Source of the DNA: Obrimoposthia wandeli | Lineage: Eukaryota | Assembly: GCA_977020255.1 (NCBI GenBank) | Contig: CDROCS010000506.1 | Location: 868,001-932,000 of the forward strand | DNA length: 64,000 nt | Reading direction: 5' to 3' | Program-made: the position numbers and the translations under genes | The notes under the pieces: model-generated | Told to the model about the DNA's origin: nothing | Databases searched by the model: none | What the model saw: the letters and a program-made list of their open reading frames with translations, nothing else | Shown: piece after piece, positions 6,251-12,468 of the stretch | Numbering within the stretch: position 1 is the first letter of the stretch | How the letters are laid out: every line of letters begins with the position of its first letter

Positions 6251-6435
6251 ATCCTCTACGCTGCGCACGAGGTATTTAAGCCCCACATCTAATATGTTCA
6301 AGTTAATTTCAAACATTTCTAAATGTCGCTACACAGCTATAAACACCCAGAACGTCAAATCATTATGTACAATACGAATATGATTAGAAATTCTAGTAAA
6401 AAAGTCGATAAGGTGAATACAACACGTGATCGAAT

Positions 6436-9518: not shown

Positions 9519-10727
9519 ATGGATTTAGTATCAACACGTTTTGAAAAATGTATTAAGTGTACCATCTGTACCGTGTACTGCCCTGTTGCCAAAGCCAATC
9601 CTAATTACCCAGGACCAAAAGAATCAGGCCCTGATGGTGAGCGCCTCAGGATCAAAAGCCCTGAGTATTATGATGAAGCATTAAAGCTGTGTACCAACTG
9701 TAAACGCTGTGAAACGGCTTGTCCGTCCAACGTCAATGTCGGCGATATTATTGCGGTGGCACGTGGTAAGTTTGAGAAGAAAAAAATAAATCCTAAATTA
9801 ATGCGCGATTATATTTTAAGTCATACGGATTTGTTCGGCTCACTATCAACACCCATCGCGCCCTTGGTTAATAAGATCACAGATTCAAAGATCATCAAAA
9901 CCATCATGGATAAAACCGTGGCGATTGATAAGCACAAATCGTTACCTAAATACTCATTTGGTTCGTTTCGCCATTGGTATAAAAAACAAGCCAATACGCA
10001 ACTACAGTTCGAGCGCCAGATCAGTTATTTTCATGGCTGCTATGTTAACTATAACAACCCACAACTGGGCAAAGATTTAATAAAAGTACTCAATGCCATG
10101 AATATTGGCGTGAAGTTATTGAAGAAAGAAAAATGCTGCGGCGTGCCACTCATCGCCAATGGTTTTCATGACAAAGCCCGTAAGAATGCCGAATTTAATG
10201 TTAAACACATGACAGAGGCTGTAGAACAATTTAATACCCCGATTTTATCGACATCATCAACTTGTTCACTGACTTTAAAGCAAGAATACCCGCATGTATT
10301 AAAAGTAGATAACAGTAAGATTTCGAATAAGCTTGAGTTCATTACGTCATTTATATTACGTGAATTTATGAACGGTAATATGCCTGAATTAAAGCCTGTC
10401 AATAAAACCATTGTGTATCATACGCCGTGCCATTTAGAACGCAGTGGCTTGGCTATTTTTACTATCGAATTGTTACGTACGATCCCTGGATTGAATGTCA
10501 TTGTACTTAACAGTGAATGCTGTGGTTCTGCTGGTACTTATGGTTTTAAGAAAGAAAACTATGACGTGTCGATGAAGATAGGTAAAGGCTTGTTTGAACA
10601 GATAAAACAGAGTGATGCTGACTTTGCGATCACCGATTGTGAAACCTGTAAATGGCAAATTGAAGAGAACAGTGACTTAGAAACTATCCATCCGGTAAGT
10701 TTATTAGCACAATGTCTAACTGATTAA
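9519..10727 (+). CDS. glpC: Anaerobic glycerol-3-phosphate dehydrogenase subunit C
   Basis: Two 4Fe-4S motifs (CIKCTICTVYCP, CTNCKRCETACP) and two CCG domains. Confidence 0.96.
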   Translation: MDLVSTRFEKCIKCTICTVYCPVAKANPNYPGPKESGPDGERLRIKSPEYYDEALKLCTNCKRCETACPSNVNVGDIIAVARGKFEKKKINPKLMRDYILSHTDLFGSLSTPIAPLVNKITDSKIIKTIMDKTVAIDKHKSLPKYSFGSFRHWYKKQANTQLQFERQISYFHGCYVNYNNPQLGKDLIKVLNAMNIGVKLLKKEKCCGVPLIANGFHDKARKNAEFNVKHMTEAVEQFNTPILSTSSTCSLTLKQEYPHVLKVDNSKISNKLEFITSFILREFMNGNMPELKPVNKTIVYHTPCHLERSGLAIFTIELLRTIPGLNVIVLNSECCGSAGTYGFKKENYDVSMKIGKGLFEQIKQSDADFAITDCETCKWQIEENSDLETIHPVSLLAQCLTD

Positions 10728-10755: not shown

Positions 10756-10820
10756 ATTAGCTTTTCTAATCCTGATGACAAATTTATTTCGCTATAAAGA
10801 TAGATAATAATAGCTATAAT
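10756..10820 (+). promoter_or_regulatory. Candidate activator-dependent promoter with LysR-type palindrome
   Basis: ATTAG-N5-CTAAT at 10756-10770; TATAAT at 10815-10820; no good -35. Confidence 0.45.
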
Positions 10821-10843
10821 GCAGTTAAAACGGAGGGTTAGAG

Positions 10844-10885
10844 ATGATTAAATTAGATTGTCTCTTTCTTGTCGCACTTAGATAA
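10844..10885 (+). CDS. Candidate 13-aa peptide MIKLDCLFLVALR
   Basis: GGAGG SD at 10832-10836, ATG 10844, TAA 10883-10885. Confidence 0.35.
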   Translation: MIKLDCLFLVALR

Positions 10886-10907
10886 ACTAATTAAAAAGGT
10901 AATTATT

Positions 10908-11015
10908 ATGACAACTCAATTGATCAGCAACTTCATCACCACTATGCTAACAAAAGTTGTAGCATCTTACGGTCGCTCATTCGTAGAACTGTATAACCGC
11001 GATAATAAGTTATGA
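10908..11015 (+). CDS. Candidate 35-aa small protein MTTQLISNFITTMLTKVVASYGRSFVELYNRDNKL
   Basis: AAAAAGGT SD, ATG 10908, TGA 11013-11015; amphipathic-helix pattern. Confidence 0.55.
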   Translation: MTTQLISNFITTMLTKVVASYGRSFVELYNRDNKL

Positions 11016-11022
11016 AGATAAT

Positions 11023-11062
11023 ATCTGTCAGTAACGAGTCTATTCGATCGCTACTGACAGAT
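11023..11062. terminator. Hairpin between convergent small ORF and dbpA
   Basis: ATCTGTCAGTA ... TACTGACAGAT inverted repeat; short U tails. Confidence 0.55.
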
Positions 11063-11073
11063 GCATTTAACGA

Positions 11074-12468
11074 TTAATCGTTAAATGAACGTACGATCCA
11101 AGCTCGGAATGTACGACCTTTCAATTTACCTTTACCAATCTTCTGTACAGCCGCTTTCGCCACTTTAGTATCAACAGCAACATAGGCACAGTTGTCAAAC
11201 AGTTGGATTTTACCCACTAGCTTTCCATCAATACCGTCTTTACCAGTCAATGCACCAAGAATATCACCAGCACGTACTTTCTGCTTTTTACCACCATCAA
11301 TACGGATACATTCCATCGGTGGCACCATTGGTGTTTCGTTTAAAACACTTTCTGGTGGTAATGCTTCTGGTGTGATCATACCAAAACGATCTTCAAGCTG
11401 TGCAACTTGATAACCTTCTTTATCATCAAATAAAGTACAAGCAAACCCTTTACTACCAGCACGGCCAGTACGACCAATACGGTGAACATGTATTTCGCTG
11501 TCGTGCGCAACGTTGAAATTAATTACCGCATCTAACGACTCAATATCCAGACCACGAGACGCAACGTCAGTAGCAACAAGAACAGAAACACTCTTCGTTG
11601 AAAAACGTACTAGCGCTTGGTCACGATCGCGCTGCTCTAAGTCACCATGCAATGCAATGATGCTAAAGCCAAAGTGACCTAATTCATCTGCAACATCTTG
11701 CACGTCTTTCTTAGTATTACAAAAGATAACCGTTGATTCAGGTTTGTGCTGTAGTAACAAGCCACGTACTGTATCTAAACGTTCACCAAAGTTTTTTACT
11801 TTATAGAAATGCTGTTTGATAGAGCTATCGTCATGTGTCGATGCTACTTCAACCATTTCTGGGTTCTTCATTATTTTCGATGCAATTGCTTCAATCTTTT
11901 TCGGGAACGTTGCACTGAATAATAATGTTTGACGGTCGCTTGGTGCTTTCTCAACAATTGCGTCAAGTGCATCTTGGAAACCCATTTCTAACATACGGTC
12001 AGCTTCATCAAGTACAAAAGTAGTTAGATTATCTAATCGTAACGTGCCTTTCGTTAAATGATCTAATACGCGACCTGGTGTACCAACAATAATATGTGCG
12101 CCGTGTTCTAATGAACCGATTTGTGGGCCAAATGGCATACCACCACACAATGTAAGTACTTTAATGTTATGAATACCACGTGCCAGTTTACGAATTTCTT
12201 TCGCTACTTGGTCAGCAAGTTCACGTGTAGGGCAAAGTACTAATGTTTGAATACGGAAACGTTCTACGTTTAAACGCTGCAATAAACCTAAACCAAAGGC
12301 AGCTGTTTTACCTGAACCTGTTTTACCTTGGCCAATTACATCGTTACCAGCAAGAATACTCGGTAAGCTTTGTGCTTGGATAGGTGTCATCTCGGTATAA
12401 CCGAGCGTATCTAGATTAGAGACAAGCTCTGGACGTAAATTTAGAGAAGAAAAATTAGTTTGGCTCAC
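11074..12468 (-). CDS. dbpA: ATP-dependent RNA helicase DbpA
   Basis: [20 protein letters not shown] motifs; C-terminal DbpA RNA-binding domain (IDGGKKQKVRAGDILGALT). Confidence 0.93.
   Translation of the reverse strand: MSQTNFSSLNLRPELVSNLDTLGYTEMTPIQAQSLPSILAGNDVIGQGKTGSGKTAAFGLGLLQRLNVERFRIQTLVLCPTRELADQVAKEIRKLARGIHNIKVLTLCGGMPFGPQIGSLEHGAHIIVGTPGRVLDHLTKGTLRLDNLTTFVLDEADRMLEMGFQDALDAIVEKAPSDRQTLLFSATFPKKIEAIASKIMKNPEMVEVASTHDDSSIKQHFYKVKNFGERLDTVRGLLLQHKPESTVIFCNTKKDVQDVADELGHFGFSIIALHGDLEQRDRDQALVRFSTKSVSVLVATDVASRGLDIESLDAVINFNVAHDSEIHVHRIGRTGRAGSKGFACTLFDDKEGYQVAQLEDRFGMITPEALPPESVLNETPMVPPMECIRIDGGKKQKVRAGDILGALTGKDGIDGKLVGKIQLFDNCAYVAVDTKVAKAAVQKIGKGKLKGRTFRAWIVRSFND

What the first reader, a model, noticed from the sequence alone, without database searches (positions are those of the whole stretch)
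10756..11062. Self-contained micro-operon of two tiny peptides with a LysR-type activator site
Seen in the gap between glpC and dbpA, missed by the ORF track: perfect palindrome ATTAG-N5-CTAAT (T-N11-A, also ATTA-N7-TAAT) centred about 64 nt upstream of a start site implied by TATAAT (10815-10820); no -35; GGAGG then a 13-aa ORF (MIKLDCLFLVALR); AAGGT then a 35-aa amphipathic ORF; then a closing hairpin. Known: LysR recognition sites sit near -65 of activator-dependent promoters (GcvA-type motif). The first SD lies in an AAC-GGAGG-GTT mini-hairpin resembling a CsrA site. Inference: an unannotated regulated small-protein operon or dual-function sRNA.
Basis: partly seen in the sequence, partly recalled or inferred. 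Interest (0 to 1): 0.7.

Follow-up and report, generated by a model that had tools for sequence, protein, structure and literature searches.

The report
Small protein gene with GcvA-type promoter
The gap between glpC and dbpA holds a real, unannotated gene for a 35-residue helical protein whose promoter looks like that of the glycine-responsive small RNA GcvB; the same gene and promoter layout recur in Moritella, Aliivibrio, Photobacterium and a further unnamed group, which points to an unrecognised small-protein member of the glycine (GcvA) regulon.

Summary
Comparison with relatives splits them into real and incidental.

**Real:**
- The 35-aa ORF (10908-11015) is intact in all 8 Moritella genomes that carry the element. 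All its indels are in frame, and pairwise dN/dS is about 0.06-0.8 (mostly 0.1-0.4).
- A profile search found 25-39-aa homologues in 34 of 401 genomes of the same order.
- In all 33 loci examined, an ATTAG-N5-CTAAT box (0-2 mismatches) lies 43-45 nt upstream of a -10-like hexamer.
- That box is the published GcvA consensus, centred at -65 of E. coli gcvB. It sits at the same spacing in the gcvA-gcvB regions of Moritella, A. fischeri and one further relative.
- The closing hairpin is conserved. It probably serves as a two-way terminator shared with dbpA.

**Not supported:**
- The 13-aa ORF has an ATG in only 3 of 8 species and indels that are not multiples of three. It overlaps a conserved 5' stem-loop.
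- The GGAGG "SD / CsrA site" is not conserved either.

**Verdict:** this is a self-contained small-protein gene, probably activated by GcvA. No match was found in Pfam, NCBIfam, Rfam or the papers searched. The protein's function is unknown. No RNA data could be obtained, so transcription is inferred.

The parts
10756..10770 (.). GcvA-type recognition box ATTAG-N5-CTAAT (box 1), centred about -65 of the inferred start site
   Evidence: Perfect match. Arms conserved and spacer variable in 8 Moritella species. The same box sits 43-45 nt before the -10 in 33 of 33 homologous loci. It is identical to the published GcvA inverted repeat at -65 of gcvB (PMC5002191).
10782..10799 (+). Conserved block in the -35/-40 region (ATTTATTTCGCTATAAAG). 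Candidate weaker activation site for the LysR-type protein, in place of a -35 hexamer.
   Evidence: Largely conserved in the 8 Moritella copies, nearly invariant in its 3' half, while the spacer after it diverges. Related 'ATTTTTnnCGTTTG' blocks sit at the same place in other homologues and in gcvB promoters. Only 6 of 10 positions match the box consensus (my reading).
10815..10820 (+). -10 hexamer TATAAT. The start site inferred at 10827-10829 has not been measured.
   Evidence: Invariant in 8 of 8 Moritella copies. 44 nt after box 1, the same spacing as in gcvB promoters.
10835..10870 (+). Conserved 5' stem-loop of the leader, followed by a U-rich stretch.
   Evidence: RNAalifold consensus on 8 species and single-sequence folds. 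The change ATG to ATA is matched by G to A on the other arm.
10844..10885 (+). 13-aa ORF: not a conserved coding sequence
   Evidence: Start codon present in 3 of 8 species. Indels of 20-36 nt that are not multiples of three.
10877..10891 (.). Second, near-perfect box (CTTAG-ATAAA-CTAAT) just before the ribosome-binding site. Moritella-specific, role unknown.
   Evidence: One mismatch. Conserved in 8 of 8 Moritella copies and perfect in G012. Its distance to box 1 varies with leader indels, so strict DNA-loop phasing is unlikely.
10895..10899 (+). Shine-Dalgarno AAAGG of the small ORF, 8 nt before the ATG
   Evidence: AAAGGT invariant in 8 of 8. GGAGA/GAGAGA at the same place in the other homologues.
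10908..11015 (+). Small protein gene, 35 aa (28-39 aa in relatives), with conserved core Y-x-R-x-F-V-E-L-Y
   Evidence: Intact in 8 of 8 Moritella copies. Indels of 12, 24 and 33 nt, all in frame. Third codon positions vary most (26 of 35, against 16 and 13). Pairwise dN/dS about 0.06-0.8, mostly 0.1-0.4. 34 of 401 genomes carry a homologue. Single helix, pLDDT 89.
11023..11062 (.). Conserved hairpin, 14 pairs in the main stem (18 predicted pairs with the weak outer extension). Probable two-way terminator shared with convergent dbpA.
   Evidence: one pair of the main stem changes on both sides (G-C to A-U) and the rest are nearly invariant. Retained in strain JT01, which has lost the ORF. No U-run on the + strand. 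On the - strand the tail is AUAUUAUCUUCAU (read from the sequence).
11064..11087 (.). 24-nt palindrome spanning the dbpA stop codon
   Evidence: Conserved in all Moritella genomes compared, including those without the small gene, so it belongs to dbpA and not to the element.

Best explanation
The glpC-dbpA gap holds an autonomous, unannotated gene for a 35-residue, single-helix, amphipathic protein. Its promoter has a good -10 and no -35. It depends on a LysR-type activator bound at a 15-bp ATTAG-N5-CTAAT box centred near -65, most likely the glycine-responsive GcvA. This is the same layout as the gcvB small-RNA promoter.

The transcript would start near 10827 and carry an 81-nt leader with a 5' stem-loop. 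It would be translated from AAAGG/ATG at 10895/10908 and end at a hairpin shared with the convergent dbpA gene.

- Shown: the ORF evolves as a protein, and the box/-10 layout is conserved across several genera.
- Inferred: that GcvA binds the box, that glycine induces the gene, and where the transcript starts and ends.
- Speculative: that the protein binds and tunes a transporter or enzyme of glycine, one-carbon or purine metabolism, as other small proteins do for their regulons.
For: Coding:
- The ORF is intact in all 8 Moritella species that carry the element. Its only length changes are in-frame (12, 24, 33 nt).
- Synonymous changes dominate: pS reaches 0.76 while pN stays at or below 0.28.
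- The C-terminal 15 residues are almost invariant.
- Profile searches in six frames found homologues in 34 of 401 genomes of the order, and in named A. fischeri ES114, P. profundum, P. damselae and P. aquimaris.
- The 21 cydA-purL-type copies show many synonymous differences under a conserved peptide.

Promoter:
- In 33 of 33 loci a box with 0-2 mismatches lies 43-45 nt before a -10-like hexamer.
- The consensus and its -65 position match the published GcvA sites of gcvB (PMC5002191; PMC3658693).
By my count it is 45 nt before the gcvB -10-like hexamer in Moritella, A. fischeri and G089.

Autonomy: the gene sits in different neighbourhoods, namely glpC/dbpA, cydA/purL and others, always with its own promoter and hairpin or terminator.
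Against: - There is no transcript, start-site or translation evidence.
- The box is no more frequent genome-wide than a control pattern, so the case rests on position and conservation.
- Moritella's own gcvB box has one mismatch (ATAAG).
- Another LysR paralogue (42% identical to GcvA) could bind instead.
- The + strand hairpin lacks a U-tail.
- Nothing constrains the protein's function. It has no Pfam, NCBIfam or atlas match, and its neighbours differ between lineages.
- Five of 13 Moritellaceae genomes lack the element (one of them only 2.7 Mb) and JT01 keeps only a relic, so it is dispensable.
Confidence: 0.72

Rival explanations
1. Dual-function RNA: the transcript encodes the small protein and also acts as a base-pairing or protein-binding regulatory RNA.
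For: The Moritella leader has nucleotide-level conservation beyond what coding needs: the 5' stem-loop and box 2/UAAACUAAUUAG. In the cydA-purL lineage most of the 21 copies keep a near-invariant 3'UTR hairpin GTTTTG-TTAGCG-CAAAAC before a canonical terminator, while synonymous sites of the ORF vary. The promoter is of the gcvB type.
Against: No RNA element is shared between the Moritella-type and cydA-purL-type transcripts. There is no Rfam match. Moritella lacks a U-tailed terminator for Hfq. The predicted pairing with GcvB is no better than for shuffled sequences.
Confidence: 0.25
2. The gene is real, but a different regulator recognises the box (another LysR-type paralogue or an unrelated AT-palindrome binder), so the gene is not part of the glycine response.
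For: Moritella genomes encode a second GcvA-like protein, 42% identical. LysR boxes are degenerate (T-N11-A). The Shewanella study reports a GcvA motif that differs from the E. coli one listed at the time (PMC3223726).
Against: The box equals the 15-bp consensus derived from 150 gcvA-gcvB regions. It occurs beside gcvA itself in the same genomes, with the same 45-nt spacing to the -10 where counted. A similar box precedes kbl-tdh, which makes glycine from threonine.
Confidence: 0.15
3. One reading: a micro-operon of two peptides (13 aa then 35 aa), with a CsrA-type site at the first SD.
For: In the window and its two closest relatives (G006, G008) a 13-aa frame with ATG is open and preceded by GGAGG or CGAGG.
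Against: The ATG is ATA or CTA in four relatives and the region has diverged in G012. Indels are not multiples of three. GGA is lost in G006 and G002, and the G-run shifts in G010 and G012. The region is explained by a conserved stem-loop.
Confidence: 0.07
4. Type I toxin-antitoxin locus: a small toxic peptide with a structured leader, controlled by an antisense RNA.
For: Small helical peptide and structured 5' leader. A promoter-like site on the - strand (CTGACA-18-TATTAT, 11031 to 11002) would give an RNA antisense to the ORF's 3' end. The element is patchily distributed and lost in some strains.
Against: The peptide is charged and amphipathic, not a transmembrane helix (mean hydrophobicity 0.05). 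It is single-copy in most genomes searched and at the same place in every Moritella genome that carries it. It is under purifying selection across genera, with a metabolic-type activator promoter. The antisense 'promoter' lies inside the dbpA terminator hairpin, and one such hit is fewer than the 4.3 expected in shuffles.
Confidence: 0.04
5. No gene at all: chance ORFs in an AT-rich 3' spacer of glpC and dbpA.
For: The region is 31-35% G+C, where short ORFs and AT palindromes arise easily. No database names it.
Against: In-frame-only indels, dN/dS below 1, and homologues with the same promoter layout in other genera and other neighbourhoods.
Confidence: 0.03

Closest known systems
gcvB promoter / GcvA-activated promoters (E. 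coli gcvA-gcvB, gcvTHP)
   Same: A 15-bp ATTAG-n5-CTAAT inverted repeat centred at about -65, a weaker element nearer the -35, and a poor or absent -35 hexamer (PMC5002191). The same spacing to the -10 is seen in the gcvB promoters of Moritella, A. fischeri and one unnamed relative.
   Different: It is not divergent from gcvA, and it drives a protein-coding transcript instead of an untranslated RNA. Moritella copies carry a second box downstream of the start site. Binding by GcvA is untested.
SgrS/SgrT and AzuCR/AzuC (small proteins encoded on regulon-specific short transcripts). Comparison from my own knowledge and from the reviews listed.
   Same: A short, stand-alone transcript under one metabolic regulator encodes a helical protein of fewer than 50 residues. 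Such proteins act by binding a transporter or enzyme of the same pathway. In Moritella the gene happens to sit beside glpABC, whereas AzuC acts on GlpD.
   Different: No sequence relationship was tested or claimed. The partner protein is unknown. The glp neighbourhood is not conserved in other carriers, so it is probably coincidental.
VcdRP/VcdP of Vibrio cholerae (PMC8672173, listed)
   Same: A small protein (29 aa) of the same bacterial order on a short transcript with a metabolic role. It is a precedent for unannotated genes of this size.
   Different: As I recall the paper, it is CRP-controlled rather than GcvA-controlled. The present family was not found in V. cholerae or in four other Vibrio species searched.

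Membership tests
GcvA-dependent (LysR-type) promoter | 15-bp inverted repeat ATTAG-n5-CTAAT (contains CTAAT and T-N11-A) | tested here: met
   Perfect at 10756-10770. Consensus taken from PMC5002191 and PMC3658693.
GcvA-dependent (LysR-type) promoter | Box centred near -65 of the transcription start | tested here: inconclusive
   The box is 44 nt before TATAAT, which gives -64 to -66 if transcription starts 7-9 nt after the -10. The same 43-45 nt holds in 33 of 33 homologous loci and in the gcvB promoters counted. No start site has been measured.
GcvA-dependent (LysR-type) promoter | Second, weaker repeat near -43/-35 (activation site) | tested here: inconclusive
   The conserved block 10782-10799 lies there, but only about 6 of 10 positions match.
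GcvA-dependent (LysR-type) promoter | The same box is used at the gcvA-gcvB region of the same organism | tested here: met
   On the same contig (C506:1503233-1504126, gcvA) the intergenic region has ATAAG-AAAAA-CTAAT 45 nt before TATAGT, followed by a GcvB-like RNA with the GU-rich stretch. The box is perfect in three other genomes.
GcvA-dependent (LysR-type) promoter | GcvA binds the site and expression responds to glycine | not testable with these tools
   Needs a gel shift or footprint, and a reporter in a gcvA mutant with and without glycine.
Protein-coding small ORF | Reading frame, start codon and SD kept across species, with purifying selection | tested here: met
   Homologues in 34 of 401 genomes.
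Protein-coding small ORF | Evidence of translation | not testable with these tools
Two-cistron leader-peptide operon (13 aa + 35 aa) | The first ORF is conserved as a coding frame | tested here: not met
   ATG in 3 of 8 species, and indels that are not multiples of three.
CsrA binding site | Conserved GGA in the loop of a short hairpin | tested here: not met
   GGAGG changes to CGAGG, GTAAG or AGAGG. In the consensus fold several of these G residues pair in the base of the 5' stem-loop.
Type I toxin | Hydrophobic membrane-spanning peptide plus a conserved antisense or overlapping RNA | tested here: not met
   Mean hydrophobicity 0.05 and net charge +2. The only antisense promoter-like site lies in the dbpA terminator and is within chance.
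Known RNA or protein families | A match to an Rfam, Pfam or NCBIfam model | tested here: not met
   Nothing above chance. No usable atlas hit.

The most novel reading that the evidence does not exclude
The protein is the post-translational arm of the glycine circuit. It would be induced by GcvA together with GcvB and would directly bind a glycine or amino-acid transporter, or an enzyme of glycine, one-carbon or purine metabolism, much as SgrT complements SgrS. In the cydA-purL lineage the same transcript also carries a conserved 3' RNA motif, which would make it a new dual-function RNA of the GcvA regulon.
Probability: 0.3. Interest if true: 0.8.

Novelty: new member of a known kind. Interest (0 to 1): 0.62.

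Why it matters
GcvA and GcvB form one of the best-studied amino-acid control circuits. To my knowledge its described direct GcvA targets are gcvTHP, gcvA and the GcvB RNA. A conserved small protein driven by a gcvB-type promoter would add a protein effector to that circuit.

It is directly testable in tractable hosts: A. fischeri ES114, and possibly Shewanella if that attribution holds. It also shows that regulator-box plus small-ORF co-conservation can recover genes that annotation misses. Only a handful of unnamed, often mis-started calls of this family exist among 1.8 billion protein representatives.

Tried and rejected
- **Rfam:** scans of the window region and of five homologous loci found only chance snoRNA-like hits.
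- **Protein family and atlas searches:** Pfam, NCBIfam and the ESM atlas gave nothing.
- **GcvB pairing:** the predicted duplex between GcvB and the leader is not better than for shuffled leaders (z from -1.6 to +0.6), so I dropped the idea.
- **Long leader hairpin:** the alternative pairing 10848-10863 / 10880-10895 is not kept in relatives, because loop changes are uncompensated.
- **Genome-wide box counts:** the perfect box is at control level, so no regulon can be read from counts alone.
- **Box upstream of glpA:** the 1-mismatch box at 6383-6397 is not conserved in relatives.
- **Literature:** searches for the peptide motifs and for GcvA plus small protein found no description of this gene.

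Full report
**Setting.** The window is part of contig C506 of a 1.35-Gb mixed assembly. C506 is a multi-megabase bacterial contig. Its GlpC is 92-96% identical to that of Moritella strains.
- glpC (9519-10727, +) and dbpA (11074-12468, -) converge on a 346-nt gap.
- The gap is 31-35% G+C.

**Observation.**
- the perfect palindrome at 10756-10770;
- TATAAT at 10815-10820, with no -35 (one search finds no consensus promoter on the + strand);
- GGAGG at 10832-10836;
- a 13-aa ORF at 10844-10885;
- AAAGG at 10895-10899;
- a 35-aa ORF at 10908-11015;
- an inverted repeat with arms 11023-11037 / 11048-11062.

**Comparison within Moritella.** Eight species carry the element, counting the window, always between glpC and dbpA. 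DNA identity to the window is 70-91%.
- Strain JT01 keeps only a relic of the ORF's 3' end plus the hairpin.
- PE36 and DT_65 have a roughly 100-nt gap with a different hairpin.

The alignment separates the features sharply.

*The 35-aa ORF is a gene.*
- Its ATG and the AAAGGT before it are invariant.
- The frame is open in all eight copies, at 28-39 aa.
- The only length differences are in-frame: 12, 24 and 33 nt.
- Third codon positions vary most (26 of 35, against 16 and 13).
- Pairwise dN/dS is about 0.06-0.8, mostly 0.1-0.4.

*The 13-aa ORF is not a gene.*
- ATG is present only in the window and its two closest relatives. The others read ATA or CTA there, or have diverged (G012).
- The region takes 20-36-nt indels that are not multiples of three.
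- Its sequence conservation is explained by a 5' stem-loop (10835-10870) recovered by RNAalifold and by single-sequence folds.
- In the consensus fold three G residues of the GGAGGG run pair in the base of that stem. The motif is not kept in several species, so neither an SD nor a CsrA site is supported.

*Other conserved elements.*
- The palindrome arms, a block at 10782-10799 and TATAATGCAGT are conserved, while the sequences between them drift. This is the pattern expected of a promoter.
- A second near-perfect box (10877-10891) precedes the SD in all eight copies.
- Its distance from box 1 changes with leader indels.

**Beyond Moritella.** A profile of the eight peptides was searched in six frames in 301 genomes of the same GTDB order. 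It picked up weak hits that turned out to be 25-26-aa ORFs sharing the core Y-[KR]-R-x-F-V-E-[LM]-Y.
- After adding them, the profile found significant hits in 34 of 401 genomes.
- It also found hits in named A. fischeri ES114, P. profundum, P. damselae and P. aquimaris.
- It found none in five Vibrio, two Salinivibrio and two Psychromonas genomes.
- HMMER against 1.8 billion representatives returned nine small-protein clusters. All are unnamed, and several have wrongly extended starts.
- Pfam, NCBIfam, Rfam and the ESM atlas have nothing.
- Full-text searches for the peptide motifs returned no paper.
- AlphaFold2 on the alignment gives one helix (residues 2-34, pLDDT 89). The conserved core has a hydrophobic moment of 0.60.

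**The promoter.**
- In every one of the 33 loci examined, an ATTAG-N5-CTAAT box with 0-2 mismatches lies upstream of a -10-like hexamer. The gap is 44 or 45 nt in 32 loci and 43 nt in one.
- By my estimate from base composition, a match with at most one mismatch would occur by chance in about 2% of 320-nt upstream regions.
- The literature gives this exact 15-bp inverted repeat as the GcvA site. A comparison of 150 gcvA-gcvB regions found two ATTAG-n5-CTAAT repeats centred at -65 and -43 of the E. coli gcvB start. This extends the CTAAT and ATTA-n7-TAAT motifs footprinted by Wilson et al. (PMC5002191; also PMC3658693).
An 'ATTTTTnnCGTTTG' block follows it, as at the small gene in the same genomes.
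- In Moritella, on the same contig as the window, and in A. fischeri, the gcvA-gcvB region carries a one-mismatch box 45 nt before the gcvB -10-like hexamer. G089 has a perfect box at the same 45-nt spacing. In Moritella and A. fischeri a GcvB-like RNA with the GU-rich stretch follows.
It remains biochemically untested.

**Autonomy.** The neighbourhood differs between lineages:
- glpC/dbpA in Moritella;
- other neighbours in the Aliivibrio-type loci.

The cydA-purL carriers are probably Shewanella. cydAB is SO3286-85 there, and the adjacency of purL is from my memory. The gene always travels with its own box, -10, leader and hairpin or terminator.

**The 3' end.**
- The Moritella hairpin is conserved. 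One pair of its main stem changes on both sides (G-C to A-U) and the others are nearly invariant.
- It lacks a U-run on the + strand. On the - strand it is followed by a U-rich tail.
- It survives in JT01 without the ORF. It most likely terminates dbpA and is shared by the small gene.
- The other lineages have canonical terminators.

**Mechanism proposed.** GcvA bound at box 1, and probably at the weaker block near -40, recruits RNA polymerase to a -10-only promoter when glycine is present. The short mRNA, stabilised by a 5' stem-loop, is translated into a helical amphipathic protein.

By analogy with other regulon-specific small proteins (SgrT, AzuC, VcdP; my knowledge), that protein would bind and tune a partner in glycine, one-carbon or purine metabolism or transport. 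This last step is speculation, because no data constrain the partner. An added RNA-level role is possible, especially where the 3'UTR motif GTTTTG-TTAGCG-CAAAAC is conserved.

**Limits.**
- The genomes from the genome search are unnamed, so the distribution is given by named test genomes only.
- The box alone is not enriched genome-wide.

Noticed in passing
L151-L174 (cydA-purL-type loci), 20-130 nt after the small ORF's stop: A short hairpin, GTTTTG-TTAGCG-CAAAAC, is kept nearly unchanged in most of the 21 copies, just before a canonical terminator, while the ORF's synonymous sites vary. This suggests an RNA-level function (a dual-function RNA?).
   Followed up: partly
L118 (G089:C2, box at locus 1501) and L117 (G178, box at 1501): A perfect GcvA-type box plus the 'ATTTTTnnnGTTTG' block and a -10, beside a conserved 289-aa gene (possibly MotY-like, my guess from its N-terminus), with no ORF downstream. 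This is a candidate further GcvA-dependent small RNA.
   Followed up: no
L131 (G017:C1, box at locus 2001): A GcvA-type box lies between a TetR-family gene and what look from their N-termini like kbl-tdh (threonine to glycine). It fits a glycine regulon.
   Followed up: no
window 6383-6397: A one-mismatch box lies 44 nt before TAAGAT, about 130 nt upstream of glpA. It is not conserved in L002-L008, so it is probably chance.
   Followed up: yes
window, whole: There are 12 boxes with at most one mismatch against 3.5 expected from shuffles. Most lie inside genes. The excess is unexplained.
   Followed up: no
L002:5210-5393 (Moritella sp. JT01); L003 and L004: JT01 keeps a degraded piece of the ORF's 3' end plus the hairpin, which indicates gene loss by deletion. 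PE36 and DT_65 have a different hairpin in a roughly 100-nt gap.
   Followed up: partly
G000 contigs C5015, C1209, C506, C4913, C253; C3840:154273-154344(-): The assembly holds several bacterial genomes: five GcvA orthologues lie on five contigs. A second copy of the small ORF lies on another contig.
   Followed up: no
L175, L176 (P. damselae); L177, L178 (P. aquimaris): These Photobacterium genomes carry two copies of the small ORF each, the second weaker. The copies were not inspected.
   Followed up: no
window 11002-11031, - strand: A promoter-like site, CTGACA-18-TATTAT, is antisense to the ORF's end. It lies within the terminator hairpin and within chance expectation.
   Followed up: partly
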